A stretch of 64,000 nt of DNA from Macrostomum lignano (GCA_002269645.1 NIVC01002201.1:140277-204276), one strand, 5' to 3'. Positions 16,226 through 52,877 are shown, numbered from the stretch's first letter. Numbers and translations are program-made. Notes: generated by a model from the letters alone, not told the origin.

Positions 16226-16715
16226 ATGGTCTCTAGCCTAAAAAACTAGTCTTGTTTCTTTTTATTATTTTTCATTTGCTTCAAAAGGTGCATTGATTTT
16301 AAGTGCTGCAGGCCTCCCTCGTAAATGCAATCTCGATGTCCGAGGGGGGCCGTTCTGTTTCGGGCATAACAATTCCAATAGGAGAGGCAGGCCAAGGGTT
16401 GCAGACAGAGTGGACAACCGGCTGCAGCGTATGAAGGCGGGGGATGGCAAAGCGCATTTGGAAATTGCAGACGCCAAAAATGCCAGTCTGTCTGCTTCTG
16501 CGTTTGTGTATTGCTCGATCTAGCATTGGAACGTTGGGTCAGTTGGCCTATCTTCCTACGAGAAAAATATTAATAGATAGAGGGATGTATACATGTACCT
16601 AGATACACAGTACTCTGCTACAATCTAATACAACAGGTTGTCTTTTTTCTATAGTAGATATGTAGGTTTTCACTTTAATGTTGCTTTTGCATGCTGATTT
16701 TTTGTGGGTTACGCC

Positions 16716-18030
<1,315 letters not shown>

Positions 18031-18057
18031 AGTAGAGTAGCAGCAGAGTAGACTCAC

Positions 18058-18145
18058 CCTACTAATCCTGGGGGCCCGTCGCTGCCGCTGTCGAAACTTG
18101 TGAAAATAATTCGACGACATTGTCGTTGCTGTTGTTGTGCTAAAC
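18058..18145 (-). CDS. dvl: Dishevelled basic-region exon (88 nt)
   Basis: cgcag|G TTT AGC...AGT AGG|gtgagt encodes (R)FSTTTATTMSSNYFHKFRQRQRRAPRISR. Phases match both neighbouring exons (phase 2 in, phase 0 out), and it fills the conserved SR-FSS..RRR..-SSFSSIT interval of Dvl proteins. Confidence 0.9.
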
Positions 18146-19292: not shown

Positions 19293-19894
19293 CTGGATGA
19301 TTCAGCTTCATCTTCCGAATCAAAGAAGCTGGTGGTGTCAAGATCGCTGCTTAGTATTGATCCGGCTGTTTCGTACAGCTGCTGCTGTTGCTGGCGCCCG
19401 CCTTGCAGCTGCAGGCCGCCAACCCGAGGTCTGTGATTGGGCACGAATGCGTGGTACAGGTGCGCTAGACGATCTGGTCGAATAAACTGCGGCTTTCTAT
19501 GCTGACCCATCAACAGTCTGCGATTGCTTGATGAAGCTTGCTGCTGCTGCTGCTGCTGCTGCTTTTGCTGTTGCTGCTTTTGCTGCAGAAGCAGTCGCGA
19601 CTGAGACTTTTGTGGCTGCTGCTGCTGTTGCTGCTGCTGCTGTCTCTGTTGCGTCCATGTAACGAGCGGCTGCCTAGCATTCGACTTTTGAAAACTGGAA
19701 AACGGTTCGCTAGACTGTCTACTGTGCTCAGCGCCCGAGCTGGTCGCAGCCACCGATGCGCCAACTAAATTGCGATCTCCGTTGCTTCCGGTAGCTCCCG
19801 GTCTGATTGAGGCGCCATTGCTTGCGCCTCCTCCGCTGGCCACTTGTTGCTGTGAGACACTGTGAGACAGAGGCAGCCCGGTCTGATGATTCAT
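19293..19894 (-). CDS. dvl: Dishevelled 5'-most visible coding exon (polyQ plus Dvl-specific YET..SSDLDTTSFFDSEDE motif); true start uncertain
   Basis: LYETAGSILSSDLDTTSFFDSEDEAESS(R) followed by donor AG|gtgcgc at 19292. The three exons total 2211 nt, in frame (736 aa) from the ATG at 19894. Confidence 0.8.
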
Positions 19895-26104: not shown

Positions 26105-27355
26105 GCCATCAGAATTTCATGAAAAGCAAATTATGAGGCAACTGAGTGCAGTTCAGGGTCAGCTGTTTGCTGTCATTAAGTTTATTTTTAAGAGGTACTT
26201 ACCGCTCCTTCTGGACACACATGGACTAAAGGCTTATCATGCAAAGACTCTGATGTTCTTTATGCTTGAGAAGCACAGAACTAGTTAGTACCTTAGCTTG
26301 GAAGTTCCAAAATTTGATCGTTCTACTAAAAGAGGCACTAGACATGATGGTGTCATAATGGACTCAAGCAGCTTACCTGATGAGTGCATGCCGCACTTTT
26401 TAACTTCTGACGTTCCATTCTACTTTAAGAATGCTGGAATCGGCCGTGACTTTGACAACACAAAAACGAGGGTTCGAGACCGACTTAGCGAGCTTTGAAG
26501 AGATGTCAGTGAAGTGGTCGAGCAGCTAAGAAAACTCGTGAGACCGCTGCAGTCAGAGAAATTTTACTTTTAGCCATTCACTCTGCTTCCACTGAGGACT
26601 TTATTTGATGTCGCTCAGATCAGAGAAGCAACTGATGAGGAGGAGCACTATTTAAAGTACGCTGATGTATACAGGTTGGTCAACAATTGTATTAGTGAAT
26701 TGCAGTCAGAGTCAAACAACAGAGACACTCTTCTAGATGCAAAGTCTCGTTGTTGGAGGCAGCTGAATCTTTTGCACTCGCTGCAGTGGTGCCAGTGCGC
26801 CACCCTATGCTTGACCGCAATTGCGCATCTCAAATTTGGAGAATTTGAGCAGGCTGTGAACTTGTTAAAACAGCTTCAGATGCAGGATATTACACTAGGC
26901 TTGATGCCAAATGAAACTAAATGGATTCAATGGACAAGTCTACCCACTGAATCAGACTGGGCGTGGAGATTCTGCCTTCCTTGTGACTGTCCGCCTCTCT
27001 TCCCTTACCTACCTGAGTTTACTCAGACTCTGTTGACAGCGAGGTTATTGCAGCCTCGCTCCTCCCATCTGTACGTGAACTTCCGCTGCCTGAGCTGGAG
27101 TCTTCAAGCGGAACTGCTGCACGATTGCTCACCGATCAATTTTGACCCGTGGTTGGATGAGTTGAAAGAAGACCCAGACTTGGAGGAGCTGCTCACTCTT
27201 GCCCACTAAAGCGACTGCCGCGACCACGTAGAGTTCTGTGTAGCGACAGATGACAGAGATCGGAGATTAAAAACGCGTCGCCATGGACACTCAGGACTTT
27301 GAAAAGATTAAAAAGGCCAGTGAAAGACTAGAGAGGATCTACTGCACCCGTTTTT
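26105..27355 (+). pseudogene. Mab-21/cGAS-like (cGLR) pseudogene, C-terminal two-thirds only
   Basis: HEKQIMRQLSAVQGQLFAVIKFIFKRYLP..GLKAYHAKTLMFFMLEK, CMPHF..YFKNAG, F*PFTLLP, DWAWRFCLP, SHLYVNFRCLSWSLQAELL and DLEELLTLAH*SDC all match 38181-39606. Several in-frame stops (e.g. ~26570, 27207) and frameshifts. Confidence 0.88.
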
Positions 27356-28789: not shown

Positions 28790-31608
28790 ATGGCCTACCA
28801 AATTTCGATGCAAAAATCGCTCGCGGCAGCTGCCATTCGAGCCAAAGACTCGCGTCGACTTCTACCGATCTGCCAAGAGATGAAGTCGAATTTCATTCTC
28901 ACTATCGACCGTTTCGAACAGTCGGTGGCTCACCATATTGCGTGCTTGCCTAAAAACTGTCTCTGCTGCCTTGAGGCTCTTACTTCTAGGCTTGGACCCG
29001 ACTGCCTCACCTGCTTGAACAAATTAAACAATACTCCGGTGCATCTAGCCGCTCTATACCAAGACGAGTCGTGGATGAGGTTTGCCCACCAACTCGTTGG
29101 AAGTGACTGCTTCTATCAGACGGGCAACAACGGTCGCAACGCTTTTCACAATGCCGCCTTAAATGAAGTGACAAATTCTGTTCTTAAGTGGCTTGTTGAG
29201 CAATGCGGTGTCGATTGTTTATCTGTTCGCGACCAATTCGGCAATACTCCAATACATCTCGCCGCTTTGAAGCAGGATGAGGATTCATTGCATCTCTTCC
29301 AGACAATCCTAGGATGCGACTGCTTTAGTCAGTCTAATAGCAGCAACCAGAATGCTGTTCACTTTGCTGCTATGAATGTACGGCAAAGTTCTTCCCTCAA
29401 AATGTTGGTCTCACTTCTTGGTTCGTCCTGCTTATTGACTAAAGACTCAAATGATGCGACCCCTGTCCATTTGGCTGCTCAATATCAAGATGTGGACTCG
29501 CTCCGCTTCATCTTCAATTCATTGGATTGCTCAGCATTCAATCTCGTCGATGTTAGCGGAAAGACTTTGGCCGACTATGCGCAAGAAAACACTCTGCACG
29601 GGGAGCAGATACTGCAGTTAATCGTTGAAATAAAGGAAACACAGTCGGAGCAGCAGTCCGAACCGATACAAGAGATGGCCTGCTTGCAAATGCAGAAGCA
29701 AACGGAGCAGCAGCAGCAAGAAGAACAGCAGCAAGAAAAACAGGAGGAGCAGCAGGAGCAGAAACAGGATGAGCAGCAGGAGCAAAAACAGGAGGAGCAG
29801 CAGGAGCAGAAACAGGAGGAGCAGCAGGAGCAAAAACAGGAGGAGCAGCAGGAGCAAAAACAGGAGGAGCAGCAGGAGCAAAAACAGGAGGAGCAGCAGG
29901 AGCAGAAACAGGAGGAGCAGCAGGAGCAGGAGCAAAAACAGCAGGAGCAGCAGCAGGAGCAAAAACAGGATGAGCAGCAGGAGCAAAAACAGGAGGAGCA
30001 GCAGGAGCAGAAACAGGAGGAGCAGCAGGAGCAAAAACAGGAGGAGCAGCAGGAGCAGGAGCAAAAACAGGAGGAGCAGCAGGAGCAGAAACAGGAGGAG
30101 CAGCAGGAGCAGGAGCAAAAACAGCAGGAGCAGCAGCAGGAGCAAAAACAAGAGGAGCAGCAGGAGCAGAAACAGGAGGAGCAGCAATATGAAGCCAAAG
30201 AAGACCGGAGTCCTGCGTCCAATCGGAACTCCTTAGTTAGGTTTGTACTCGTATTTGGTGTGTACTGAAAATGCAACCAATAACGCATATTACAGATGCG
30301 TTACAAGTTCAGAAGAAAATTTGCTGTAAATAAGTTTTTTCATGAACAAGCCTAAATAATTCCGTTTTACATATTTATTCAGACGCAAGCTTCCACTGGA
30401 CCCAGATTTCACGAATTGGGACTTCCTCTACGACGACGAAGGCAATAAGCAACAAATTGGCGAAGGCGGATTCGGCCAGGTGTTCAAAGTCTTCACCGAC
30501 AAGCGGCAAACTGTGGCCGTCAAGATTGTTCAGCTGGAAATTGTGGGCAACCTGAAGCTTCTAGACCAAGCGGTTGAACAGGAGAACGCGGAGATTGCTG
30601 TTCTGAGAAGCATTCGGCATCCAAACATTCTGAAGTTTCTCAAGTCTCAGCGCACCAGGAACCACAAGTTGTGCATCTTTACAGAGCTCATCGCCGGCCA
30701 TAGTCTCACTGATCTGATGCGACGTCAGCGGAAACCGTTTGATGAATGCGCCATCAGGGATTTTTCTATGCAGGTGGGTATCATACTAAAAATATGAATT
30801 AGCATTCTCGGAGAGTGGCGAATAGTAAACGCGTTAGGGATTCGATTCGGTGGTTAATTTGCTTTCAAATTAGCAAATTTGGAATCCACCCGTGGCTACG
30901 GGCTACGAAGGCTACGAAGTTTTTACCTTTTTACGGATTTGAGCGAAAATGGGGGCCTTGCCGTTTAAAACAGTGTGTACAGTATAACGGTTGCTGCGCC
31001 TAAGGATGTACGCGTCATTATCATCTGGCTGTGGGCATCTCCTGCAAGCTAGATGTAGTTATCTAAACTGTCTTCTAAAGCATAAATCCTTGCTCTACTT
31101 TTAAAACTATTACACTGTAAATTTACAGATTTGCATCGCTCTCAACTACCTGCACAGTCGTAATCCCGTGACGCTGCACCGGGACATCAAGTGCAGCAAT
31201 ATCATGCTGAGTAATAAAGGCATCATTAAACTGATCGATTTCGGCCTCGCCAAGGAGATCTTTCACAGCATTGGTAGCACTAAAAGTCTCAGCGGCACCG
31301 TCAACTTCATGGCTCCAGAGCTGTTCAACGAGGAAGGCAAAACTGTGTACTCACCCAAATCGGACGTATGGGCGTTTGGCTGCACAATATACGAAATGCT
31401 AACGATGGAGCCGCCAAACTCAGAGCTGGGTTGGCAGCAAGTCGGATTCCGAATCCAGAAAAATCCTATGCCAGATCTCCCAAATGGTGTCTCCGACAGT
31501 CTGAGGGATTTTTACCGTCGCTGCGTTGTGAGGAATCCTAAGAGTCGAGCTGATACCGACGAACTTCTGGAGCACATGTTTCTACCTAAGGTAGATTGCC
31601 AGCGATAA
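28790..31608 (+). CDS. Ankyrin-repeat / QE-rich linker / Ser-Thr kinase (STE/NEK-like), 773 aa; exons 28790-30240, 30383-30773, 31129-31608
   Basis: About 6 ANK repeats ([45 protein letters not shown]). Kinase motifs [23 protein letters not shown] and DVWAFG are all intact. Introns are GT-AG and phase-matched; the 2322-nt total is divisible by 3. Confidence 0.92.
29700..30185 (+). repeat. Coding tandem repeat, 24-bp unit CAGGAGCAGAAACAGGAGGAGCAG (QEQKQEEQ)
   Basis: About 18-20 near-identical units, in frame within exon 1 of the ANK-kinase. Confidence 0.95.
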
Positions 31609-34369: not shown

Positions 34370-35146
34370 GTTGCATATACGACACGCTTCGATTAAACTT
34401 CATACGTTCGTAAATAAAGTGCCTGAAAACCTGACAAGTGCGCTTGACGATTGTCCAAAAGGAGTGGATGCCTTTCTGATTGTCCTAAGATACGATGTCA
34501 GGGCGACTGAGGAAGAACTAAATGCTGCCAATGATGCAGTCAAATGTTTGGCCCAAAAGCTTTTGAAAGAGCGATCATTGTCTTCACGCATTGTGAAAAG
34601 CTTAATGGCAACAATAGAGGCTTTCAAGAATATCTGAAAAATAAACTATGCCCTGCAATTCCCAAGTTCAGAGATCTGCTGTCGAAAGTGGGCGATAGGG
34701 TCACCATGCTGAGTAATGACAAGAGCGATGCCAACTCCGAGTTAAGACAGCAGCAGATCAATGACCTGTTAGAACTAATCGATGAAGTTGCACAGCACAA
34801 CAAAAAGCGCTTCAAAAAAACGGATCAGGAAACTGAGTCAGACGCGCAAAACCAGATGGTGATGATTTCTGGCGCTCTACGCCAGACCCAGCAACTGCAA
34901 GTGGCACAGCAGTCGCAGATCCAACAAATTCAGCATCTGTTCATGATTAAGATGATGCTGGAAATGCACGCTCGTGAGTTCGGTATGGCAATGGAGGTAC
35001 AACGCATGAGAATGCGAGAAACATTGGAACAGGAGCTAAGAAATCAAAGGTTGGAAATGCAATATCAGCAACGAAGGGCAATCGAAGTCCACGTACATGA
35101 AAGAGAGAGAGAGAAGGCGACTGCTCTATTCTATAATCGATTTTAG
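34370..35146 (+). pseudogene. AIG1/GIMAP-like GTPase fragment with coiled-coil tail, frameshifted, G1 (P-loop) not found
   Basis: CPKGVDAFLIVLRYDVRATEEELNAANDAVK / MFGPKAFERAIIVFTHCEKL..FQEYL..FRDLLSKVGDRV..QQQINDLLELIDEV follows the AIG1 consensus (PGPHAFLLV..RFTEEE..LFG..IVLFTHGD). 1-nt deletion in the A-run at 34542-34544. Confidence 0.75.
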
Positions 35147-38180: not shown

Positions 38181-39606
38181 CTACAGACTGTCGCATTGAA
38201 TTTCCAACTCACTGCTGACGTTTGACTTCTCAGCTTGAAGCATCTCAAGCTTTTTCGCAATAACCCCGAGTTTTTTTCGATCCCGAATAGTCATCGAAAG
38301 GCTGCCGTTCTCCTTAATAGTAGCTTGCTCCAAACTGAACTGGAGATGCTCCGGACAGTCACTGTAATGAGCCAGGACTAGGAGCTCTTCTAGATCGGCG
38401 TCCTCTTGCATCTCATCGTACCAATCTTGAACGTTATAATCGTTTTTCTGAAGCAGCTCAGCTTGCAGGCTCCAGCCAATGCAACGGAAATTAAAGTACA
38501 AATGTGAGGCCCCAGCAACTGAAAGCCTTGCTGAGATGAGAGAACCAGTGATGGCCGGTAAGAAGTGAAACTGAGCCTCTTTTAGGCTGGGAATGCAGAA
38601 TCTCCAGGCCCAATCGGGACCACGATCGTCAAGCAGGCTTGCTGTAAGGCTTCCACTTGAACTCCACGCTCTTTGCACCCTATGACTGACAAGTTGTTGC
38701 GCTAACCTGGCTGCTTCAGCTCGATTTGACTGTCTTAACAGGGCTATTATTGTCAGGCACATCCGCGTACATTGAAATACCTCTGGTAGTGAATTTAGCC
38801 TAGAAAGTAGAAGGTCGATTTGACAAGTTTCTGATTGAAGATCATGGATGCACCTTTGAACTGTTCGATAGGCTTTTAAGAGCTTTGTCGTGCTGGTTGG
38901 ATCTACGTTGGAAACTGAGTTTGGCTGACCGGTCAGTGGCAGCAGAGTGAACGGGTGAAAGAAGAAGCAATTTGAAGTGAGCGTATCGACATGATTTCGG
39001 ATGGAATCGACAACAAGGTTTACGTCATTTCGCAGCTTCGACAAGAAACGTCTAACTTTTGATTTAGTAGAATTAAAGTCTCCACAAGTTGTGCCAGCAT
39101 TCTTAAAGTAAAGTGAAACGTTTTCCATAAAGAAGTGCGGCATGCAAACGTCCCGAGAATGGCTCCAATCAAGAAACTGAAGCATGAGATCCAGAGACTC
39201 CTTGAGCAAGGTAACAATGTTGAAGCTTTGCCAAGCAGTAGTATCAGAGCTATATACTTCTCCATCATAAAGAAAAGCAAGGTTTTTGCGTGATAGGTTT
39301 TCAGCCCTCGCGTATTGAATTCTTTTGGTAGCTGATGCTTAAATATGAATTTGAGGAGAATGAACAATTGGCCTTGAATTGAGTTCAAGCTCCTCATAAT
39401 TTGCTTCTCGTGCAGGCTGAAGCTAATCCTCAATTCGTTTGATTTATTGGGTCTATAAGCTCTGACTAGATGCACATTGACTGGCTGAGGGATGATTAAC
39501 TGACGAATTTTCTCTTCGCAAAGGCTGCTACAGCATGGAAACGCTTGGCATGTGTCCTGGGCTGGTCGAACGCCGCATCCGTCAATTCTCACAGCCGGAT
39601 TGCCAC
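38181..39606 (-). CDS. Exon 3 of repeat-ANK-cGLR gene: third catalytic Asp, Mab-21 C-lobe and helical extension (1-nt frameshift near 39255)
   Basis: Acceptor cttcag|GT at 39607, phase 1. QDTCQAFPCC, ELRISFSLHEKQIMRSL, LKTYHAKTLLFF (Mab-21 signature) and CMPHFFMENVSLY. Stop at 38181. Confidence 0.85.
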
Positions 39607-40728
39607 CTGAAGTTAGCAGTTTGCATTTAATTTTATGCGATTTTTAGCGCACGGGTGGGTGTATTTTGATGCCTGACTTTGTTTTCAGATAAAATTAAAA
39701 TTAACAGAAGCTCACAGAAGGCACGATAAAATAAGAAAACAGCCATGGTATAGTGTGCTAATTTAAATTAAACAGCAATACTTTTAGTTGTCGGTTTGAG
39801 ATCCTTCACAAATTATTTTCTATAGCTATCTCCAAAGTGGGAGCGTATAACTCGTTATTTGTATATTATTTTGCCGCCAGCTGTTTATTTAATCTATGCT
39901 CTTGATCTCTAACTGTAATTTCATGTGTTTTATTTGCTCCATGGCCCGACCAAGAAGTTATGAGCAGCAGGCAATCCCGAATATCTCTTTAGTTCTTCTT
40001 TGACTTCGAAAGGTACGAAATATGCGAGTACAAACTGTCAGTCTCTCGGTTTTTAATTGTCAACAACCGAAGGACAGAATTTTCTCAGTTTTTTGTTTTA
40101 AATTTTCGGTTTTCACGCACCAGGTTAAAATTTAATGTACCGATCGACTTCTGGTTGCAAATTAAGCTAGTAGCTACGAGCTACAAGTAAGCGGTTTCCT
40201 TCAATGTTGTTTAAGAAGTTTCTTCGACATAAACAACTGAATTACGAGTAGAAATAAGCTAGACTTTTCTCTTAGAAAGTTTTCGTAGAGCTGGAGGCCG
40301 ATAAGGAACGTATACTCCTCAGAACCTTAAAAAATGTAAATCTACAACCAGAGAACGGATAAATTCGGTCAAAATAACTTGCATTGAAAAAACCCGATAT
40401 ATAGTGGCTTAGTAGTTCAGTTGTCTATGCGGGTAAGCAAGCAAAGTTTCGCTGAAGTTTAATTTAGTCGTTACACAAAGTAAATTTTTGTGAAATGTTT
40501 GCACATAAAAACTGTATTTTTTACGCTTTCACTTATTTAGTTTGATAAACTTTGGATAAAGCACGTACGACGTACTTGCTTCATTTTCACTCACAGTTCT
40601 CGAGTACAGTGTCATTTTAATCAAGTTTTCTGGGTAGTTCGAAAGTGACTTAACTTTCTTTCGTTTTATGTCGATACAATCGAAATCTTGAACTTTCAAA
40701 GACAATTCTGAATTGAGTTCGAACTTAC

Positions 40729-41090
40729 CAACGATAGTTGATACTTGTGTATGACCATCCACCAATGTTAGTCTAGCGACGCCTGCGCATTTACAGCCGC
40801 CTTCAAGATGGAATAATTCGTCACCAGCAATTACGGTCCAGTCGATGTCAGAGTCTGACGCTATTTTTCCATTCAAATGTTTTAAACTGAAGCCCCAGCC
40901 TTCAGAGTAGCTTCCAGTCATGTATCGTGATTCCTGCGTGAATGCCTGAACTAATTCTTCCAGCGAATCAGCAACCTCATGTTGAAAATGTACCCTGGTG
41001 AGCTTGAAGCCAGCATTGTTGAGCAGACGATGCAGATCTTCGCTCAGTCTCTCATCAACTTGTTGTTCCTCAGCTAGAAGTTTCGCGAAT
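40729..41090 (-). CDS. Exon 2 of repeat-ANK-cGLR gene: nucleotidyltransferase catalytic motif
   Basis: cttaag|A TTC GCG... opens FAKLLAEEQQVDERLSEDL..MTGSYSEGWG..ASDSDIDWTVI (GS..DxD Pol-beta superfamily signature). It ends GTT G|gtaagt at 40728, phase 1. Confidence 0.88.
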
Positions 41091-41337
41091 CTTAAGAATA
41101 GAGCAAAAATGAAAATTGAGTTTCAAATCAAGTTAACCTTGTAATACCGCAAAATTCTATTTAAAACTGAATAGAATACACACTCACTTTGGTTGATTAA
41201 CTTGTAACTCAGTTTCTTGTCTGTACTGCTTCCTTTCGTCTGTAATCCTATGGAAGAAATGAGGAAAATTTATCCGAAACATTGCAGCACTTTAAATTGC
41301 CTATAATTATTGTTGATTTAATCAAGGTTTAACTTAC

Positions 41338-43754
41338 AACGCAATCGAACCAATATGATGTTGAAGTTTTTCAAGCACATCAAAATGTTGGAATTGTTCA
41401 GCCAACTGAGCACAGCTCTGTCCGTTCCGGTCACGATGTTCGATGTCTGATCTGCTATCGATCAACGCCATGGCAACTCGAAAATGACCAGCAATGCAGG
41501 CTCGAGACAACGCAGTCCTACCGAACTCGTCCTGAACACTTACCGATGCGCCTTGAGCGAGTAGATGCTCTGCTAATTCGCACTGTCCAGAATCTGCGGC
41601 TAGCATTAGCGACGTGCTGCTCGAATCGATCGGTTCGTCAATTTGTTTCAAGTGTTGCAGCAGGTTAAATACTATTGGAACGTAGCCATCCGAGATGCAC
41701 TTGGCCATAAGCCTGAGATGTTGCGCGTGAGCTAAGTGAGGCAGAATCTGCTCAAGTGCAGGAATTTTATTCTCATTTGAGCAGCTTATTGCGCTGCGCA
41801 CTAAATCGTGCAGCATCCTGTCTTCAAAAATGAATTCGCAATTTTCGGGACTGAAAATCTGCTTTATTTTGTTTCGACCAGCGAATTGTAGAATGCCTAA
41901 AACAAAATTCCAATGGCCATGCGAGATTGCAACCTTTACGACCTCAATGCAGCAAAGGTTTTTGCTAGCTTCGCAACTAATAACTAGAAGCAAACGTTTG
42001 ACCACTTCAATTTGGCTTCTTGCTGCAGCGACTTTAGCTGCCTCTGTGCAGAGCTTCTCTTTAGCCGTTTGGTCTGAAACTTCTTGCACCATGCTGATCA
42101 CCATATCCCACGAGCGCTGCCGGGTAGCCGTCTCGACCAAGCGAATCCAGCAGGCGTCCCTGGTGCTTGGTTCACTGATGCTCCTAGCAGCAGCCTGAGC
42201 TTGCTCCCAGCTGGGCCGAGTGTATCTAGCTGCAATAATTGCCAAGTCGGCGCTGCATTGATCCTTCAGTGGAAGTTCGCTGATTGTTGTCCTGGCTAGG
42301 TTAGCCATCTCCCAGTTGCAGTTATGGGCTGCTGCTTTGGCGGATTCAATGCAGGTGAATATAACAATGCCTTTGTCTTTTATTTCCGCTAGAAAATAAT
42401 CAAATTCACCTGACGCGCCCAGTCGAGAGGCAGACTTTGCAGCGCTGCTGCAGGCATGGCTTCGAACCGATTGATCTGCTATCAGACCCGCTGTGTACTT
42501 ACTCGTCTTCCAGTCTCTTCTAGAAGCGGCAGATTTCATGATTACTGAGCAGCACTCATCTTTCAGATTTGTGTCAGAAATACTTTCGAGTTGCTGCCTA
42601 ATAAATTCTGGTTTACTAAACTCGAAAGCGGATCTGGTCAAAATGGAAACGCGTAGTTCTTCCTGTAGACGTTGATCAGAAATTGTTGGTAATAATTGGT
42701 GCACAACATTCCGATGGCCTTGAGATGCTGCGGCTTTAATAGAGTTACTGCAGCATTGGTCCTTATGATTAGGATCCGAGATGATGCTCAGAATGCTGGA
42801 CACAACTTCGGCATAGCCTTGGCTAGCAACATAGGAACAAATCTTATTACAGCAATCGAGCCTCACGTTGTCATTAACTATGGATTTAACGAGGCCAATA
42901 ACTGTAGTCCACTGGCTCTGGAACTTCGCCGGCCATTCAATGTCCTCGAGGCGAATGTCACTTGATTTCTCCTTGTCAGTCAATAAGTTAACGTACGCAG
43001 CCATCTTGTCACGATAGTGTGACGCCGCTGATGCGGCCGCTTTGCGACAAAATTCATCTCTGGCGTTCGGATCGGACATGAGGTGGACTAGATTAGTGAC
43101 TAAGCTCCAGCGATCTTTCTCGCTAGCAGACATTGCTGCAATAATGCACACGGAATCCCGAATTTTCAAATCTGAGACGAGTTTAACAACTCTCAAGGCC
43201 GTTCTTTTCTCGCCCCACTTGGCTGCCCGTTGAGCCAATTCAGAGACGCACTGCAGCTTCAGGTCTTCATTTTGAATGATCGTTATTACGCGAATGGCCA
43301 CGGCCCATTGGCAATTTTTGGCTAGCATTCTAACCGCGACTGCACAACGATGATTTCTCATACGTCTATTGTCGATCGCTACTAAAAACTGGGCCATGGA
43401 TTCCCAGCGACAGTTTCGTTGTGAAATATCTATCAGCTCCAGTAGGAATTCGTCCAAATCTTCAGCGTTCAGTTTCTGATTGACTGACAGAACATTGAGA
43501 ATCTGTCTAACCGTGAAAGCGTCTCCGTTTTCAGCTGCGGATCGAGCCATTTGACAGCAGGCGAGCTGAAGGTCGTCTCGAGATCCAAACAGGTCAATAA
43601 GTCGGACTATCGTCGGCATGATAAATGTGCAGCGATTTTTAGCGGAAGCTTGCCGTAACAGACAAATATTTCTGCTTTGCCTCGAATACGTCTCGCCCCG
43701 CGATCTATTTGTATTAGTTGGCACATTACAAAACGTGCGTTTGCGTTTTACCAT
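41338..43754 (-). CDS. Exon 1 of repeat-ANK-cGLR gene: ~17 degenerate 33-aa helical repeats plus 3 canonical ankyrin repeats
   Basis: An 805-codon open frame with periodic ISD....D.C...A..AA..G.W..V..L, then SLMLAADSG, FGRTALSRAC and NGQSCAQLA. It ends TT|gtaagt (donor 41337, phase 2), matching the phase-2 acceptor at 41091. Confidence 0.85.
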
Positions 43755-44819: not shown

Positions 44820-46450
44820 CTTTGACTTACTTAGCTGCAGGGCTGTCCCGGAGGGGACACAGCGGGAAGGCGCGGGCGCCCATTCCGCTAGTCCCTGAAC
44901 GGCCGACGCGTCGCTATGGACGGAGGGTTGGCGCCGCCCAGGGAGGTCCCCCAGTGTCGCCAGCAGCTATAGTGCTCTCTGGAAAGGAGAGTTCAGCCCT
45001 GCGGGTGGCCCGAAGGTAGCGCATGAGCTGATTAAAGTTTTCGGGTTTGCACGCTTCAGTAATAGATGTGTGTGGCCCGAGGTAAGTGAGTCTGGCCCGC
45101 GTGAAGGCGGGACAGATGCTGACGAAATGCTCAGCGGTTTCGTCACCTGAGTTGCAGAAACTACAGGTGGCGTTGGTGGCGTTGCCCTGCAGGTACTGGT
45201 GCCTGGAGAAGCAGCCGTGACCAGAGAGGGTCATGGTGGCAGCCCGGATGTCTCTGCGCGAGAGGCGCAAGAGGAGCTTCCGGAGCTGGTGAGAGGGCTG
45301 AGGGACAGCGCCTCTGGATTGCCTGCAGTTCGTGCGGTTCGCCCAAGTCGAGCGGTGCTGAGTCCTGATCCACGCTTTGATGCGCGAGTCGATGACACAG
45401 CCAGGAATTGGGACAAGAGGTTCGGGGCCGAGAGAGGAGCCGGAGGCACCAAATTTTGCAAGGGTGTCAGCCAACTCATTTCCTCGGATCCCCACATGCC
45501 CCGGAACCCACTTAAGGGTAATTTTGTTGGCGGAACCCAACACGTTGAGGAGTTTGATACAGTCGAGGACTGTAGCAGAGTTGGTGCTGCAGCCACTGAT
45601 GGCGTGCAAGGCAGCTTGGCTGTCCGAATGGAAAATGATGTTCTTACCAGTAACGCCAGTGGCGAGAAGCTCTGCAGTGCAGGAGCTGATGGCCAGAACT
45701 TCATTTTGGAAAACACTGAAGTTGACCCCAGTGTATTGAGCGTGGGTAGCGATGACCCTCCCGTTCAGAAAGATTCCAACACCAAAGCCGGTGTTGGCTG
45801 ACTGCTTAGAACCGTCGGTGTAGCAATGAAGCTCACCAGGGTTCCATTGGTCATTGATGTTATCGCGCGAGTCGATAGCTACGGAGTAGCGCTGTCTCAG
45901 GTTGAGCGTTGAGGCAATGCCATCGGTGAAGACGCGATTGGCCTGACACTCGTTGAGAAAGTTGAGGCACAGATCGCTATGCGGGACAAGGTTCCGCTTA
46001 GCAGGTGCTCTCATGTAAATGAATTTGACGCCGGCATCAATTAGACGCCGCGTCGTTCTAGCCGCCTCACCCCTGATGAAGAGGTCAAGAGGCGGAAGAT
46101 TAAGGAAGGCCCCCATGCCAGCAAAGGGCGTGGACCTGGTGGCGTTGCAGATGAGCCTACACGCTCTGCCTTGGATCGTGTTGAGCAGGTCTGCATGGCT
46201 TTTGACCTGGGTAGCGCTAACCCAGACAACAGAGGCGTACGTAATGGCAGGTCTAACTACGGAAGTATAGATCCACCAAAGCCGCTTTGGGGATAGACCC
46301 CAAGAAGTGCCAAGTGCTCGTCGGAGCTGGGCCAGGATGGCTGAGGCACGCTTGGCTTTTGCTTTCACGTGGGAGGACCAGTTGAGCCGGTGGTCAAGTA
46401 TGACCCCGAGACATCTGGTCTGGTGCGCGAAGGCAATATCTCTGCCTTCA
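44820..46450 (-). mobile_element. 5'-truncated copy of RNase H-bearing LINE (LOA/R1/I-group like)
   Basis: Near-identical to 51249-52877. Encodes the RT C-terminus, RNase H (YTDGSK, SDSQAAL, WVPGHVGIRGNELAD) and CCHC (CSFC..H..IC). Tail taagtaagtcaaag. 12-bp TSD atttgcactgga at 44808-44819 and 46451-46462. Confidence 0.96.
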
Positions 46451-46975
46451 ATTTGCACTGGAACTGAGTGCAAATAAATGGTAACTGATGGATACATCAA
46501 ATATTCCCCATTTATACCCCTTTTGGCCGCGCCGAATAAGTCTACATGTATGTTCCAATGTAAAAGACGTTTATCTGTCCCGGCCAAATAAACGATTCAA
46601 CTAAATAAGACAAACGAATAAGCCACAAGAAAGGACTCAAAGAAATACATGTATTTACAAGCAACAGATTATAAAAGTGAGTCAATGTGTCCTAACAGAT
46701 CAACTCAATCAAAGTAGACAATCAACCCGCACAACTCCACATTGACCTCCCCCCCAAATCACAGAACTCACCAGTTGTCGTGAACATCACTACCAATCAC
46801 ACCTTCAGACCAGAGTTTCTCTTAGGACGTCGGCTCTCATTGAATTCCCCGTCCTTCCAGAGGCTCCATGGCTTTCCATGGTTGAACAAGTAGTATTGCA
46901 GCATGCTGAAAATAATTCTTCAACGTAGAAGCGCCATAGCGATCACCACATTAATTTCGGATCTCTAAGATAAAA

Positions 46976-49900
46976 AACGCACGCGAAGGTGTATTCAGCA
47001 CGCCAGTGAAGTATGAGACAGACTAGGCCTATGGGCTACGGTCTGTGATTCTTCACGCCTGCCCCTATCTTTGGCAGGTCAAGGCTGGTGGGAGGTCTGC
47101 ACCCTCTATTTGCCTCTGGCAGCCGCAGACCCCCCCCCCCACGCTGTCTCGCAAGTCGACCCAGGGTACTCGTCCCCGCGTGTGTTCAAGGCAGACCCTA
47201 GGGCTGCTGGACAGACTGGGCTCCGGCGCTGGCGACCCTATCCAGTGCCTTCGGCCGAATTTGGGTATGCGGGTCTGGCTCGCCAACCTGCAGGCCGTGG
47301 TACTGCTCAACGTACTCTCTAATGCCCAAGGTGTTGACCGTGCCGATGGGCTGGAAGGCCAGGGAGTAGTCCGGTCGCAAGCGGTCCCCCTCCTGGTCTC
47401 GGGCCAGCCTTGAGGGTTCTATTGGCCTACTGCCCGGTCAGGTGGAGCGGCCGGGTGGGTACCGCGCCCCTTTGAGGGTAGCCCACCAACCTTTTATCAT
47501 GGCCTTCGAGCCGACTATGGATAACCAAGCTTTTTCTAGGGACGGGGACCCTTCTAAACCCCAACCTCAGTCCGAAGGACCGGCCGGCCCTGCTGGCAGA
47601 TCCCAACCGACTGATTCAACTGTGGCAAAGGAAGGACCGGCTGGCTCTGCTGGTAGGTCCGACCAGAGCTACCAAACTCAAAATGCCCAAAGACCTGCCA
47701 GCTCCGCTGGTGGATCTAAGGGAACCGCGAGCTCTGAGCCTAAAGGACCGGCCAAATCTGGCAGATCCGATGAAGCTCAGCGGGCTCGGCTTGAGCGCAA
47801 ACGCGCTAAACAACGCGCCAAAAGGCAGGCCAAGAAGGGAGCTGCGGGGGCCAAAGTGGCGGCGTCCACCATGGATGCTGAAGCGACTGGAGTCCCAAGG
47901 CAACCAGGCGGGCCGGCCGGTGGAAGCTCCAGTAGTTCAGCGGCGGCGCTCCCTGGAGATGCTGCTGCGGCTGCTGAGGCCGAAACCACGGCGCAACAAA
48001 TGGCCACTGCCAACAAGGAGGTTCCTTCGGGAGCTACCTTTGCGGCGAAGGCCAAGGCCAAAATCCCGGGAGTGATCATCCAAGGTCGCGACCAGGACTG
48101 GACCACTGATCAGCTTCAAAAAGTGTGGAGTGCTGTTGACTCCTATCTGATTGGGCTGACTGTCGAGGAGGGAATCTCCATCGGCATTGAGCGGATGGTG
48201 CTGCGAAGCACATTCGTTCTTATTGCTCCTAGCAGCGAGGAGGACGCTCGGCAGCTGCTCCAGCGGCTACCGACGGTCTCCTTGGATGCTGACCTTGGCG
48301 GAGCTCTTTTTCTTCGCGAGGGCCAGCGTCCAAAGACGATACCTATGTGGTTTTCGTCCCTGCTAAGAGCACCGCAGCTGGACCAGACGTTATCCGCCGG
48401 GTCCTACTGCGTCTGAACCTCCCTGCTAGTGGACTGGTGTATCACCGCAAAGTCCACAGGGGGGAGACGGGCAATTCAATTGTCCTCGGCCTTTCCAGCA
48501 CTTGGGCGAGTCGGTACCCTAATGGATCCTCTTTCCAGCTGGGTGCCCTCAAGCTCAAGATGCGCCGAGGAAAGTCTGCCAAAGGGAAGGCTACTGCCAA
48601 CCCCGGCATCTCCGGCAAGAGCGGGGCGCAGTCTAAGGCCCAAGGAAAGGCGCAAGCCGATCCCAAAGCCAAAGCTGCGTCTCGCCCCTCTGCTAGCAGC
48701 AGTTCGGCGACCGCGGTAACGGCTCCGGCCAAGCCCCGGGAACCAAACCTGCTAGTCGGAGAAGGAGTTGAGGACGAGGCCGGCTCTTCGGAATCCGAGC
48801 TCTCCTCGGCCACCCTGGTGGGGTCTGAAGGTAAAGATGCAGGTGAGAAAGCTTCCTCCATCCTGTCATCGGAGCCTGAGGACTCTGCTGGGGGGGGGGG
48901 GCCGGTGGGGGTGAGGAGGCCATGGACGTCGACCAACTCCCATCTCCCAGTCAAGCCCCAGCGGCCTGGGACGAGGACGATCTGTTGTCCAAGTCTCCTT
49001 GATGGCCCTGGGCTCTAGCCAGACATTGCATTTAATACAGTATGACTAAGCTCCACGCTGCCAAAGGAGCGACATTCTGTCTGCAAATAAATTTACAGCA
49101 TTGCGTATCTGCGGAAGTAAATCTGATGAAGATTGCTGAGCTGTACAGGCCAGGCCTCATCCTGATCCAGGAACCCTGGATGCGCAACGGTAAGTTGCCC
49201 AACATTCCCTCTGGCTACTCTGATTTTTATGTGTGTGGCCCGGGGAACAGCCGCCCTAGAGCGGCTATCCTCGCTGCTAGCCATCTCCAGGCTTGGCTGA
49301 GGACTGATCTCTCTGATGGAGACCTTTGCGTCATCCAATCTAATCATCTCTCTCCGCGTACGTGTCTTGTTGCCTCGGTTTATATCCCAGGCGACAGAGA
49401 CCCTGCTCCCGAGAGTTTACTGCGCCTTGCGCAGTACTGCGAGTCCCAGAACGCTGAGCTGTGCTTAGGGGGCGACCTCAACGCGCACCACAAGCACTGG
49501 GGCAGCAAAGATACCAACACTAGAGGAGAGGAGCTTCTGGCCCTCATCTCTAACACAAACCTCATGCTCTGCAACCGCGGCAGCACTCCTACCTTTAATA
49601 ATGGCAGATGGACCGAGGTCCTCGACGCCACACTCGTTACCCCAAGACTCTTTGACAGAGTTGAGGAGTGGAGAGTCTGGTCTGAGGAGCCCTCCCTGTC
49701 TGACCACTGCTTTATCGCCTTTAACATCGCGGACACTAAAACCCAGTATCCGATCACTTGGAGGCGCAATATCCGCAACACTGATTGGGCGGCCTACAAG
49801 GCTGCCCTTGATCTGCACCTGCAGGAACTCACGGACTTACGTCCGATTGAGACCTGCGAGGATGTGGATCATATGGCTGAGACGCTGACAGGTTGCATTA

Positions 49901-52877
49901 TTGCAGCCTACGAAGCGGCTTGTCCTGCTCGCGCCTACAAAGGCAAGACCTCGGCGCCGTGGTGGAACCCGGAGCTGGGGAAACTCAGGCGAAAGGCCAA
50001 AAGCCTTCATCGCCGTGTCATGAAGACCGGAAACCCGGAGGACATGGAGCTTTTCCGGCAAGCCTCCCGCAATTTCAAATCTGAAGTGCGCAAGGCCAAG
50101 GAATGTAAGTGGCGCCAATTCTGCAATGAATTGGATCAAGACAGACCTACTTCTAGGCTTGTCAAGGCCCTTACAATGGACAAAATTCCAAATTAGCCAT
50201 GATCAAAAAAGATGATGGCTCTCTTACTAAAGACCCTGGAGAAGTGCTTCAGCATATGCTCAGCACATTCTTCCCGAGGGTACCTACTGCTAGACAGGAG
50301 CCCAACCATTCGATGGATGGAGCCACTTTAGCGGCGGGCATTGTCACTGAAGACCTAATCGCTCGTGCGGTCAGAACCTTCAAACCCTTCAAATCTCCTG
50401 GACCTGATGGTATCTACCCTGTTCTCCTTCGTGAAGCAGCCAAGATACCTTCATTCCTGAGACTCACCCGCAATCTTATGCGGGCCTCTATCCAGCTGGG
50501 AAACGTTCCCAAATGCTGGACTGAAGCTCGGGTAGTCTTTATTCCCAAACCTGGGAAGGGTGACTACAAAAGCGTCAAGGCCTTCCGGCCTATTAGCTTA
50601 ACGTCAGCAATGCTTAAGCTCACTGAGAGGCTTATTCTCTGGCGGCTGCTGTCCTGCGAGCTGACAGCGATGCCCCTCAGCAATAATCAGCACGCCTTCC
50701 GTACCGGGAGGTCGACTGACAGCGCCCTGCATGTGATTGTCGAGAAGATTGAAAGGGCGGTACTGGGTGACGGTTACGCTCTGGCTCTCTTTCTTGACAT
50801 TGTTGGCGCCTTCGACAACGTTATATTTGAAGCGTTTCATAGGGCCCTTCAAAATCGCAAAGCTCATGCTACCCTCATACGGTGGATCATGTACATGATC
50901 TCCAACCGTACGGTCACTGCCCAACTTCTTGGGCAAACTGCCTCCACCAGAGTCTGTAAGGGTGGACCCCAAGGCGGAGTCCTCACCCCGACGCTCTGGA
51001 ATCTGGTCATGGACGCTCTTCTAAGTGACTCCCGACCCGACCCCGTCTTCAAAGTCGGGTATGCTGACGACGTCACGGCCATTGTGTCAGGTCCGTCTCC
51101 CAGCACGCTCAGGGATCTGATGCAGAACTTTATCCGCAAAGCAGAATCCTGGGCCAATGACAATGGTCTGGAACTCTCTGAGCCCAAAACCGTTGCCATT
51201 TTGTTTACCAGCAGACTACGCTGGAACACACGTCCTCTGCAGCTCTACGGCAGAGATATTGCCTTCGCGCACCAGACCAGATGTATCGGGGTCATACTTG
51301 ACCACCGTCTCAACTGGTCCTTCCACGTGAAAGCAAAAGCCAAGCGTGCCTCAGCCATCCTGGCCCAGCTCCGACGAGCACTTGGCACTTCTTGGGGTCT
51401 ATCCCCAAAGCGGCTTTGGTGGATCTATACTTCCGTAGTTAGACCTGCCATTACGTACGCCTCTGTTGTCTGGGTTAGCGCTACCCAGGTCAAAAGCCAT
51501 GCAGACCTGCTCAACACGATCCAAGGCAGAGCGTGTAGGCTCATCTGCAACGCCACCAGGTCCACGCCCTTTGCTGGCATGGGGGCCTTCCTTAATCTAC
51601 CGCCTCTTGACCTCTTCGTCAGGGGTGAAACGGCTAGAACGACGCGGCGTCTAATTGATGCCGGCGTCAAATTCATTTACATGAGAGCACCTGCTAAGCG
51701 GAACCTTGTCCCGCATAGCGATCTGTGCCTCAACTTTCTCAACGAGTGTCAGGCCAATCGCGTCTTCACCGATGACATTGCCTCAACGCTCAACCTGAGA
51801 CAGCGCTACTCCGTAGCTATCGACTCGCGCGATAACATCAATGACCAATGGAACCCTGGTGAGCTTCATTGCTACACTGACGGTTCTAAGCAGTCAGCCA
51901 ACACCGGCTTTGGTGTTGGAATCTTTCTGAACGGGAGGGTCATCGCTACCCACGCTCAATACACTGGGGTCAACTCCAGTGTTTTCCAAAATGAAGTTCT
52001 GGCCATCAGCTCCTGCACTGCAGAGCTTCTCGCCACTGGCGTTACTGGCAAGAACATCATTTTCCATTCGGACAGCCAAGCTGCCTTGCACGCCATCAGT
52101 GGCTGCAGCACCAACTCTGCTACAGTCCTCGACTGTATCAAACTCCTCAACGTTGGGTTCCGCCAACAAAATTACGCTTAAGTGGGTTCCGGGGCATGTG
52201 GGGATCCGAGGAAATGAGCTGGCTGACACCCTTGCAAAAGTTGGTGCCTCCGGCTCCTCTCTCGGCCCCGAACCTCTTGTCCCAATTCCTGGCTGTGTCA
52301 TCGACTCGCGCATCAAAGCGTGGATCAGGACTCAGCACCGCTCGACTTGGGCGAACCGCACGAACTGCAGGCAATCCAGAGGCGCTGTCCCTCAGCCCTC
52401 TCACCAGCTCCGGAAGCTCCTTTTGCGCCTCTCGCGCAGAGACATCCGGGCTGCCACCATGACCCTCTCTGGTCACGGCTGCTTCTCCAGGCACCAGTAC
52501 CTGCAGGGCAACGCCACCAACGCCACCTGTAGTTTCTGCAACTCAGGTGACGAAACCGCTGAGCATTTCGTCAGCATCTGTCCCGCCTTCACGCGGGCCA
52601 GACTCACTTACCTCGGGCCACACACATCTATTACTGAAGCGTGCAAACCCGAAAACTTTAATCAGCTCATGCGCTACCTTCGGGCCACCCGCAGGGCTGA
52701 ACTCTCCTTTCCAGAGAGCACTATAGCTGCTGGCGACACTGGGGGACCTCCCTGGGCGGCGCCAACCCTCCGTCCATAGCGACGCGTCGGCCGTTCAGGG
52801 ATTAGCGGAATGGGCGCCCGCGCCTTCCCGCTGTGTCCCCTCCGGGACAGCCCTGCAGCTAAGTCAAGTAAGTCAAG
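46976..52877 (+). mobile_element. Full-length RNase H-bearing LINE (LOA/R1/I-group like): ORF1 ~47499-49018; ORF2 APE-RT-RNaseH-CCHC 49042-52779, with small deletions
   Basis: APE motifs LQINL, LIQEPW, GGDLNAHH and SDH. RT motifs FRPISL, FLDIVGAFD, PQGGVLTP and YADD. RNase H and zinc knuckle. Tail (taagtcaag)2. Candidate 10-bp TSD taagataaaa at 46966-46975 and 52878-52887. Frame breaks near 48340, 50190 and 52150. Confidence 0.96.

What the first reader, a model, noticed from the sequence alone, without database searches (positions are those of the whole stretch)
38181..43754. Hidden ~1400-aa cGAS-like receptor with a giant helical-repeat/ankyrin sensor arm
Four separate ORFs in the track join into one gene through phase-matched GT-AG introns: 41337-41091 (phase 2, TT|A) and 40728-39607 (phase 1, G|GT). 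The product is ~17 degenerate 33-aa repeats, 3 canonical ANK repeats, a Mab-21/cGAS-type nucleotidyltransferase and a ~200-aa helical tail. The NTase keeps GS (TGSYSEG), DxD (SDSDID) and the third Asp (QDTCQAF), plus LKTYHAKT. cGLRs are established pattern-recognition enzymes that make cyclic dinucleotides. A solenoid this large suggests NLR-like sensing of proteins or other non-nucleic-acid ligands coupled to second-messenger synthesis. Whether this architecture is already described I cannot check.
Basis: partly seen in the sequence, partly recalled or inferred. Interest (0 to 1): 0.88.

Follow-up and report, generated by a model that had tools for sequence, protein, structure and literature searches.

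The report
Frameshifted flatworm ankyrin-cGLR gene
This is a roughly 1400-residue flatworm gene that joins a long ankyrin-type repeat arm to a cGAS-like nucleotidyltransferase, a fusion type already catalogued in Macrostomum lignano, and a frameshift breaks the copy in this assembly.

Summary
The four ORFs on the minus strand (38181-43754) belong to one three-exon gene. Both proposed GT-AG introns are real. They match, in position and phase, the introns of a 1374-aa Macrostomum lignano gene.

The product has about 17 degenerate 33-aa repeats, three canonical ANK repeats, a cGAS/Mab21-fold nucleotidyltransferase and a family-specific tail of about 250 aa. The enzyme keeps GS, D-x-D and the third Asp.

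Two introns cannot join four ORFs. The third junction is a frameshift in a TATATA run (39251-39256) inside the Mab21 C-lobe. As assembled, the gene encodes a truncated 1121-aa protein.

The "helical repeats" are degenerate ankyrin repeats. Their AlphaFold model matches 24-repeat ankyrins best.

The architecture is not new. Li et al. 2023 list ANK-fused cGLRs, record Ank_2 hits on M. lignano accessions, and cloned five M. lignano constructs, including my hit P0004. None is among the 15 active enzymes they analysed in depth. The family has at least 81 clusters (50% identity).

Verdict: a new, possibly pseudogenised member of a known but functionally uncharacterised class. NLR-like sensing through the arm remains speculation.

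The parts
41338..43754 (-). Exon 1 (2417 nt, ends in phase 2): the whole N-terminal arm plus ANK repeats, aa 1-805
   Evidence: The ORF is and the donor TT|GTAAGT. Exon 1 of M. lignano P0037 has the same length and phase.
41868..43577 (-). About 17 degenerate 33-aa repeats (aa 60-629), consensus roughly x-D-x-C-C-x-x-A-A-x-x-A-A-x-x-G-x-x-x-V-V-x-x-L-x-x-I-x-D; degenerate ankyrin-type solenoid
   Evidence: A repeat HMM built from M. lignano repeats finds them. AlphaFold2 predicts a long-plus-short helix pair every 33 aa, with pLDDT 80-94. Foldseek's best matches are 24-repeat ankyrin-1 and AnkB, E 9e-10 to 4e-9. Pfam ANK models do not detect them, apart from a sub-threshold Ank_KRIT1 hit.
41355..41621 (-). 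Three canonical ankyrin repeats (aa 712-800); aa 630-711 (41622-41867) form about two transitional helix pairs
   Evidence: Pfam Ank_2 E 1e-17, Ank_4 and Ank. The helices are visible.
41091..41337 (-). Intron 1 (247 nt, GT-AG, phase 2)
   Evidence: A homologous 79-nt phase-2 intron is present in M. lignano P0037.
41188..41247 (-). Low-confidence candidate 60-nt cassette exon inside intron 1 (ccatag|GATTAC...CCAAA|gtgagt; would add ITDERKQYRQETELQVNQPK)
   Evidence: It keeps the frame and has no stop. However, 22 frame-compatible AG..GT segments exist in this intron by enumeration. The M. lignano model has no such exon, and linker length varies among paralogs.
40729..41090 (-). Exon 2 (362 nt, ends in phase 1): linker/spine helix and NTase N-lobe, with GS (40910-40915) and D-I-D (40841-40849)
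   Evidence: The motifs are conserved in the family. In the model, GS follows strand 54-58 and D81/D83 lie on strand 81-87.
39607..40728 (-). Intron 2 (1122 nt, GT-AG, phase 1)
   Evidence: The site is the same as in M. lignano P0037 (CC|G-SQPAV there, G|G-NPAV here). There is no other copy of this intron in the window.
38181..39606 (-). Exon 3: third catalytic Asp (39554-39556, within QDTCQAF at 39539-39559), Mab-21 C-lobe (LKTYHAKT at 39281-39304, MPHFF at 39129-39143) and C-terminal tail; contains the frameshift
   Evidence: Pfam Mab-21_C scores 26.3 bits on the bridged sequence. A family profile hits cGAS at E 2e-5.
39251..39256 (-). Frameshift site in TATATA: two surplus bases or one missing base; frame A runs on to a stop at 39020, and the family-like sequence resumes in frame B (SSDTTAWQSFNIVTLLKESLD)
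   Evidence: All M. lignano paralogs aligned that cover this stretch read straight through it. The 357 codons downstream are stop-free (P about 3e-9 from base composition).
38181..38930 (-). Family-specific C-terminal domain of about 250 aa (DWAWRFC, SHLYFNFRC..WSLQAELL, DLEELLVLAHYSD), fold unassigned
   Evidence: It is conserved across M. lignano paralogs. The model is confident, mixed alpha/beta. It has no Pfam hit, and no PDB entry aligns over more than about the length of a cGAS/Mab21 domain.

Best explanation
The locus is a three-exon gene of the flatworm (Macrostomum-type) ANK-cGLR family.

**Domain layout**
- An N-terminal ankyrin-type solenoid of about 22 repeats: 17 degenerate, about 2 transitional and 3 canonical.
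- A short linker.
- A cGAS/Mab21-fold nucleotidyltransferase with a complete catalytic set: GS, D-I-D, and a third Asp 55 residues after the DxD motif.
- A conserved family-specific C-terminal domain of about 250 aa.

**State in this assembly**
The last exon carries a frameshift in a (TA)3 run inside the Mab21 C-lobe. The copy as written would make a truncated, presumably inactive 1121-aa protein. The frame downstream is still perfectly open, so the lesion is either a very recent inactivating slippage mutation (or allele) or an assembly error.

**Inferred mechanism for intact family members (not shown)**
A ligand or partner bound by the ankyrin solenoid, and possibly the tail, relieves or triggers the NTase. 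The NTase then makes a nucleotide second messenger read by a downstream receptor. The ligand, the product and the receptor are all unknown.
For: **Gene model**
- ORFs and splice sites.
- Intron positions and phases match M. lignano P0037, and exon 1 has the same length in both.

**Homology**
- The C-terminal 614 aa hit 36 M. lignano clusters at 44-55% identity, E down to 1e-169.
- The arm ORF hits full-length P0037 (1374 aa) over 85% of its length.
- By region against P0037, identity is 23% in the arm, 40% in the ANK part, 51% in the NTase and 40% in the tail.

**Fold**
- AlphaFold2: pLDDT 84.2, pTM 0.85.
- Foldseek: cGAS 4k9b E 3e-7, MAB21L1, Sp-cGLR1 8gjy, MB21D2 and MiD51.
- Family profile against PDB sequences: cGAS 2e-5, Sp-cGLR1 2e-4, MAB21L1 0.13.

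**Active site**
- GS, DSDIDW and PAQDTC are conserved in nearly all paralogs aligned.
- They lie on the canonical strands of the model.

**Arm**
- A 33-aa helix-pair solenoid, best matched by 24-repeat ankyrins.
- Sister paralogs carry canonical ANK arms, for example P0186.

**Frameshift:**

**Literature**
Li et al. 2023 classify M. lignano relatives as cGLRs, record Ank_2 hits on them in Table S2, and cloned five constructs, one of them my hit P0004.
Against: - There is no transcript evidence for the junctions. The M. lignano models used as support are themselves predictions.
- Pfam PF03281 does not hit, and Mab-21_C is only just above threshold.
- The third-Asp motif is Q-D-T here, not strictly hydrophobic-D-hydrophobic as in Li et al.'s h[DE]h.
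- The five M. lignano constructs are numbered 89-93, outside the 15 active enzymes (cGLR-01 to -15) that the paper analysed in depth. No activity is on record for this family.
- Whether a STING-type receptor exists in Macrostomum was not established. Planarians lack both cGAS and STING.
- A decayed paralog fragment 12 kb away shows that the family does decay at this locus.
Confidence: 0.8

Rival explanations
1. Recently pseudogenised copy. The frameshift is real and fixed, the locus makes no functional enzyme, and it is one of many decaying members of a birth-and-death family.
For: - The frameshift lies in a (TA)3 run and fits a 2-bp slippage gain, a common real mutation.
- A clearly dead paralog fragment lies at 26115-27340.
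- The family is very large, at least 81 clusters at 50% identity, so redundancy is high.
- The window is rich in LINE insertions.
Against: - There is only one lesion in about 4.2 kb of coding sequence.
- The 357 codons after it are stop-free (P about 3e-9).
- All conserved motifs are intact.
- An assembly indel or a heterozygous allele would look the same.
Confidence: 0.45
2. A non-enzymatic Mab21 protein, like MAB21L1 or MiD49/51, that uses the NTase fold only as a scaffold or nucleotide-binding module, with the ankyrin arm for localisation or protein scaffolding rather than ligand sensing.
For: - Foldseek ranks MAB21L1 and MiD51 close to cGAS.
- No activity is reported for the M. lignano constructs that were cloned.
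- The NTase core pI is about 7.7 (family median 7.3), so it is not strongly basic.
Against: - GS and all three acidic residues are conserved across dozens of divergent paralogs. According to Li et al., Mab21L1/2/3 lack a predicted functional active site.
- The sequence profile is closer to cGAS and Sp-cGLR1 than to MAB21L1.
Confidence: 0.15
3. Two separate genes: an ankyrin-repeat protein ending at the 41334 stop, and an independent, N-terminally short NTase gene. The phase-matched splice sites would then be coincidental.
For: - The 806-aa ORF has its own stop.
- Some M. lignano models lack ANK repeats, for example P0010 at 659 aa.
Against: - The same intron position and phase occur in M. lignano, and exon 1 has the same length.
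- Most family members are predicted as ANK plus NTase on one polypeptide.
- The exon-2 reading frame is open upstream of its first ATG, right back to the acceptor.
Confidence: 0.05

Closest known systems
Macrostomum lignano ANK-cGLR paralogs, e.g. BOX15_Mlig013042g1 (P0037, 1374 aa) and PAA68676.1 / BOX15_Mlig016402g1 (P0004; construct 93 in Li et al. 2023 Table S3)
   Same: - Same domain order: degenerate repeats, ANK, NTase, tail.
- Same two intron positions and phases.
- Same catalytic and tail motifs.
   Different: - Only 23-51% identical by region, so this is a distinct member, most likely from another species. No identical or near-identical protein was found in the databases.
- This copy is frameshifted.
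ANK-fused cGLRs of other animals, e.g. Stylophora pistillata (Li et al. 2023, Fig. 1C, Fig. 4C, Table S2)
   Same: Ankyrin repeats and a cGLR NTase on one polypeptide. The authors propose a role in protein-protein or protein-ligand interaction.
   Different: - The arm here is about 800 aa and mostly too degenerate for Pfam ANK models.
- There is an extra conserved C-terminal domain of about 250 aa.
- Common descent of the fusion with the coral proteins was not tested.
Human/mouse cGAS and Sp-cGLR1 (PDB 4k9b, 6edc, 8gjy)
   Same: Bilobal Mab21 NTase fold, a GS loop, a DxD strand, and a third Asp about 55 residues later.
   Different: - About 14-17% identity.
- No cGAS-type Zn thumb was identified. 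A different conserved His/Cys cluster sits in the N-lobe.
- The core is not strongly basic.
- There is a large ANK arm and a tail.
MAB21L1 / MiD51 (PDB 5eom, 4nxt)
   Same: Same fold at similar Foldseek scores.
   Different: According to Li et al., Mab21L1/2/3 lack a predicted functional active site, and that MiD49/51 are catalytically inactive is general knowledge. This family keeps the catalytic residues.
Ankyrin-R / Ankyrin-B 24-repeat membrane-binding domain (PDB 8cs9, 4rlv)
   Same: A long superhelical ANK solenoid of comparable length; best structural match to the arm.
   Different: - 12-14% identity and TM about 0.38.
- The canonical TPLH/beta-hairpin signature is replaced by a Cys-rich D-x-C-C...A-A motif, with a longer first helix.
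NLR / STAND receptors
   Same: Only the general logic of a large repeat solenoid attached to a signalling enzyme, and a lineage-specific expansion.
   Different: No NACHT/NB-ARC ATPase. The repeats are ANK rather than LRR. Oligomerisation is unknown.

Membership tests
cGLR (animal cGAS-like receptor, Mab21-fold CD-NTase; Li et al. 2023) | Bilobal cGAS/Mab21 nucleotidyltransferase fold | tested here: met
   AlphaFold2 pLDDT 84 and pTM 0.85. Foldseek top hits are cGAS, MAB21L1, Sp-cGLR1 and MB21D2, with probability 1.0 and E 3e-7 to 1e-5. A family profile hits cGAS at E 2e-5.
cGLR (animal cGAS-like receptor, Mab21-fold CD-NTase; Li et al. 2023) | Active-site motif: GS loop plus [DE]h[DE]h X50-90 h[DE]h | tested here: met
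   G-S, D-I-D-W, and 55 residues on to Q-D-T. Caveat: the flanks of the third Asp are Q and T, not hydrophobic, in this subfamily. Sister subfamilies have L-D-L, F-D-F or V-D-I.
cGLR (animal cGAS-like receptor, Mab21-fold CD-NTase; Li et al. 2023) | Intact reading frame through the NTase domain | tested here: not met
   A frameshift at 39251-39256 truncates the C-lobe in this assembly.
cGLR (animal cGAS-like receptor, Mab21-fold CD-NTase; Li et al. 2023) | Synthesis of a nucleotide second messenger, ligand-dependent | not testable with these tools
   This needs biochemistry. The M. lignano relatives that were cloned (constructs 89-93) are not among the 15 active enzymes analysed in depth.
cGLR (animal cGAS-like receptor, Mab21-fold CD-NTase; Li et al. 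2023) | Cognate receptor (STING or other) in the same genome | not tested
   No genome of the source organism was at hand. No paper was found on a Macrostomum STING. Planarians lack cGAS and STING.
ANK-cGLR fusion class (Li et al. 2023, Fig. 1C / Table S2) | Ankyrin repeats and the cGLR domain on one polypeptide | tested here: met
   Pfam ANK at aa 712-800, upstream of the NTase. The join rests on a phase-matched intron conserved with M. lignano. There is no transcript evidence.
Macrostomum-type ANK-cGLR expansion | Full-length homology including the family-specific C-terminal domain, and a shared exon structure | tested here: met
Ankyrin repeat (for the 17 degenerate repeats) | 33-aa helix-turn-helix units stacking into an ANK-type solenoid | tested here: met
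   Foldseek's best matches are 24-repeat ankyrins over 720-900 aligned columns. This rests on a predicted model with pTM 0.47.
Ankyrin repeat (for the 17 degenerate repeats) | Match to Pfam ANK sequence models | tested here: not met
   Only a sub-threshold Ank_KRIT1 hit at aa 308-355 (27.5 bits against a cutoff of 80).
NLR / STAND receptor | Central NACHT/NB-ARC ATPase | tested here: not met
   No such Pfam hit anywhere in the product, even at E up to 1.

The most novel reading that the evidence does not exclude
The hypervariable ankyrin solenoid (23% identity to its nearest relative, against 51% for the enzyme) would be the ligand-recognition surface of a flatworm-specific receptor repertoire of dozens to hundreds of genes. 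It would sense proteins or other non-nucleic-acid ligands and signal through a nucleotide second messenger. In some paralogs this may be wired to caspases. That would make it an NLR-like innate immune system built on cGLRs, in a phylum otherwise thought to have largely lost cGLR signalling.
Probability: 0.2. Interest if true: 0.7.

Novelty: new member of a known kind. Interest (0 to 1): 0.3.

Why it matters
ANK- and TPR-fused cGLRs are catalogued, but no paper found in these searches assigns one a ligand, product or receptor. Macrostomum lignano is a tractable laboratory flatworm with a very large expansion of them, and it belongs to a phylum where most lineages lack cGLRs. This window adds one more, frame-broken, member together with a dead paralog. 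That documents birth-and-death turnover and shows that the arm evolves much faster than the enzyme. It does not reveal a new kind of system. For annotation, the practical lesson is that such genes are split across ORFs and that the frameshift must be checked against reads.

Tried and rejected
- **An 8-nt "intron" (GTATATAG) to bridge the frameshift.** It would restore the frame, but it is far too short for spliceosomal splicing. Rejected.
- **A 60-nt cassette exon in intron 1 (41188-41247).** Its splice signals look good. However, 22 frame-compatible segments occur in this intron, the M. lignano model has no counterpart, and linker length varies among paralogs. Kept only as a low-confidence note.
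- **Identifying the source species through the neighbouring Dishevelled gene.** M. lignano Dvl was no closer than mollusc Dvl, and no near-identical protein exists in the database. The window is probably not M. lignano, but the species stays unknown.
- **Single-sequence phmmer against PDB.** It gave only a marginal cGLR1 hit (E 0.024). A family profile was needed.
- **An ANK-caspase partner in the window, as seen in some M. lignano models.** None was found.
- **Literature on a Macrostomum STING or Mab-21.** Nothing relevant.
- **Pfam on the C-terminal tail.** No family.

Full report
**1. What is in the sequence**

On the minus strand, four ORFs lie between 43754 and 38181. I read the DNA and translated the joined pieces. 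Both proposed introns hold up.
- Exon 1 ends at 41338 with TT|GTAAGT. The acceptor TTAAG|A at 41091/41090 completes a Leu codon, so the phase is 2.
- Exon 2 ends at 40729 with G|GTAAGT. The acceptor TTCAG|GT at 39607/39606 completes a Gly codon, so the phase is 1.

ORFs 39020-39592 and 38181-39209 overlap in different frames.
- Frame A reads ...LKTYHAKTLLFFMMEKY, then 77 unrelated residues, then a stop at 39020.
- Frame B carries SSDTTAWQSFNIVTLLKESLD... through to the stop at 38181.
- The switch lies in GAGAAGTATATAGC. Two bases are surplus, or one is missing, within TATATA at 39251-39256.
- All M. lignano relatives aligned that cover this stretch read through it (...FFMLEKHGTDPxxxAWQPxNLIxLLKESLD).

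As assembled, the product is 1121 aa, of which 1044 are family-like. The ~1400-aa protein exists only after conceptual bridging. The 357 codons after the shift contain no stop (P about 3e-9 from base composition). They keep all family motifs. The lesion is therefore very young, or it is an assembly or allelic artefact.

**2. Relatives and gene structure**

- The bridged C-terminal 614 aa hit 36 protein clusters, nearly all from the flatworm Macrostomum lignano. Identity is 44-55% and E goes down to 1e-169. Most carry ANK plus Mab-21_C.
- The 806-aa arm ORF hits a full-length 1374-aa M. lignano protein (P0037, BOX15_Mlig013042g1) over 85% of its length.
- I fetched that gene (L001) and reconstructed its exons exactly. 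Exon 1 is 2417 nt, the same length as here, and ends in phase 2. A 79-nt intron follows. Exon 2 is 359 nt and ends in phase 1 at CC|G-SQPAV, the same alignment position as G|G-NPAV here. A 228-nt intron and exon 3 complete the gene.
- This is good comparative support for the two introns. The M. lignano model is itself a prediction, and I have no transcript data.
- A profile search of 1.84 billion representative proteins found 81 clusters (at 50% identity) with E <= 1e-30, and 1152 with E <= 1e-3. All 17 strong hits I looked up (E <= 1e-26) are M. lignano. The next tier is bivalve Mab-21-like proteins.
- No near-identical protein exists for this gene or for the neighbouring Dishevelled gene. 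The window probably comes from a related species rather than M. lignano itself.

**3. The enzyme**

- Pfam sees only Mab-21_C, and only on the bridged sequence (26.3 bits against a cutoff of 24.1). PF03281 does not hit.
- AlphaFold2 on the NTase plus tail, with a 23-sequence family alignment, gives pLDDT 84.2 and pTM 0.85.
- Foldseek against the PDB puts cGAS first (4k9b, E 3e-7). MAB21L1, Sp-cGLR1 (8gjy), human cGAS, MB21D2 and MiD51 follow, with target-normalised TM of 0.5-0.57.
- A 10-sequence profile of the NTase core hits cGAS at 2e-5 and Sp-cGLR1 at 2e-4. MAB21L1 reaches only 0.13.
- In the model, G59-S60 follow strand 54-58, D81 and D83 lie on strand 81-87, and D138 lies on strand 136-145. 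This is the canonical Pol-beta NTase arrangement.
- The D83-to-D138 spacing of 55 residues fits Li et al.'s [DE]h[DE]h-X50-90-h[DE]h motif.
- These residues are conserved in almost all M. lignano paralogs aligned. That argues for a catalytic role in the family.
- Caveat: the third Asp is flanked by Q and T in this subfamily.

**4. The arm**

- Laying the sequence out in 33-residue register gives 17 repeats at aa 60-629 (and manual reading). The motif resembles an ankyrin repeat that has lost TPLH: D-x-C-C-x-x-A-A-x-x-A-A-x-x-G-H-x-x-V-V-x-x-L-L.
- AlphaFold2 (pLDDT 79.6) predicts a regular solenoid of a 17-residue helix plus a 10-residue helix per repeat. Two transitional pairs and three canonical ANK repeats follow.
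- Foldseek's best matches are the 24-repeat domains of ankyrin-1 and ankyrin-B, aligned over 720-900 columns with E about 1e-9.
- Sister paralogs such as P0186 carry about 1000 aa of canonical ANK in the same position.
- The "helical-repeat plus ankyrin" arm is therefore one long ankyrin-type solenoid.
- It is the fastest-evolving part. Identity to P0037 is 23% in the arm, 40% in the ANK part, 51% in the NTase and 40% in the tail.

**5. The tail**

About 250 residues follow the Mab21 core. They are conserved in the family (DWAWRFC, SHLYVNFRC..WSLQAELL, DPDLEELLTLAHYSD). The model is confident and mixed alpha/beta. There is no Pfam match, and no PDB entry aligns over more than about the length of a cGAS/Mab21 domain. 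Its function is unknown.

**6. What is already known**

Li et al. 2023 (bioRxiv 10.1101/2023.02.22.529553, PMC9980059) make the following points.
- 87% of cGLRs are stand-alone enzymes. Some carry TPR or ankyrin modules (Fig. 1C, S2A, Table S2).
- Table S2 lists Ank_2 hits on M. lignano accessions, including PAA68676.1.
- Table S3 lists five M. lignano constructs, numbers 89-93, cloned for the biochemical screen. Number 93 is PAA68676.1 (BOX15_Mlig016402g1), which is my hit P0004. Number 92 belongs to the same subfamily.
- The 15 active enzymes analysed in depth are numbered cGLR-01 to -15. No activity is documented for the flatworm proteins.

I found no later paper on them. Planarians lack cGAS and STING (PMC13563047). 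Whether Macrostomum has a STING was not resolved.

**7. Interpretation**

Shown:
- One gene, with ANK-solenoid, cGAS-fold NTase and tail architecture.
- Conserved catalytic residues.
- Membership of a very large Macrostomum-type expansion.
- Frame disruption in this assembly.

Inferred:
- Intact members are nucleotide-second-messenger synthases regulated through the solenoid.

The arm's fast divergence, the size of the family and the nearby dead copy (26115-27340) fit a birth-and-death immune-receptor family. They fit relaxed constraint equally well. The NLR analogy is only architectural, since there is no NACHT/NB-ARC domain.

**8. Verdict**

- The interpretation as an ANK-cGLR is right.
- The architecture is already catalogued, so this is a new member, possibly a pseudogene, of a known but functionally uncharacterised class.
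- Interest is modest for this locus. The open question of what ANK-cGLRs sense belongs to the family as a whole. It is better pursued with intact M. lignano paralogs.

Noticed in passing
window 26115-27340 (+): A second, clearly dead copy of the same ANK-cGLR family. It is 5'-truncated, covering only the region from FHEKQIMR to the tail. It is 61% identical to M. lignano P0002 and has several in-frame stops and frame changes.
   Followed up: partly
window 34544-35146 (+): An ORF matching the C-terminal half of an AIG1/GIMAP-type GTPase (Pfam E 2e-13). It lies about 3 kb beyond the 3' end of the cGLR gene. This gene family is often linked to immunity.
   Followed up: no
window 28790-30268 (+): A 492-aa ORF with canonical ankyrin repeats followed by a long, nearly perfect (QEQKQEEQ)n tandem repeat. 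It is only weakly similar to the family's ANK regions, and no NTase or caspase follows it.
   Followed up: partly
window 22711-25183 (+): Glycine-rich ORFs matching the ALK/LTK glycine-rich domain (PF12810, E 3e-11), preceded by a weak PAN-domain ORF. This is probably an exon set of a secreted or receptor protein.
   Followed up: no
window 12861-19894 (-): A Dishevelled gene (PDZ plus DEP at 12861-14387, Dishevelled domain at 19175-19894). It contains a long (TAG)n-type microsatellite at about 16.7-18.1 kb, which produces the GC-skew spike of 0.67.
   Followed up: partly
window 2555-3340, 44914-46587 (-), 49042-52181 (+), 57019-57855 (+): Retroelement pieces: an rve integrase, a LINE-like RNase H ORF immediately upstream of the cGLR gene, an endonuclease plus reverse transcriptase pair, and another RT fragment. 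The 44-56 kb stretch is GC-rich, at 52-60%.
   Followed up: no
M. lignano proteins P0165, P0316, P0168 (L002 3001-11307): Three predicted M. lignano models run from the cGLR tail into further ANK repeats and a caspase domain (Peptidase_C14, E about 1e-25). In P0168 the join is a predicted intron of about 600 nt. This is either a real cGLR-caspase fusion or a recurrent adjacency merged by gene prediction. P0162 also carries WSC and RING domains.
   Followed up: partly
window 40790-40810 and 39524-39556 (-); NTase N-lobe: A family-conserved His/Cys cluster: F-H-L-E-G-G-C-K-C after the DxD strand, and D-T-C-x4-C-C-x3-C around the third Asp. H and the first C are invariant, and the others are at least 90% conserved. 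It may be a zinc site distinct from the cGAS Zn thumb. The geometry could not be checked.
   Followed up: no
protein P0024 (JGI metagenome contig, 3.2 kb): A family member from an environmental metagenome, 43% identical. Related flatworm-type genes therefore turn up outside the M. lignano genome projects.
   Followed up: no
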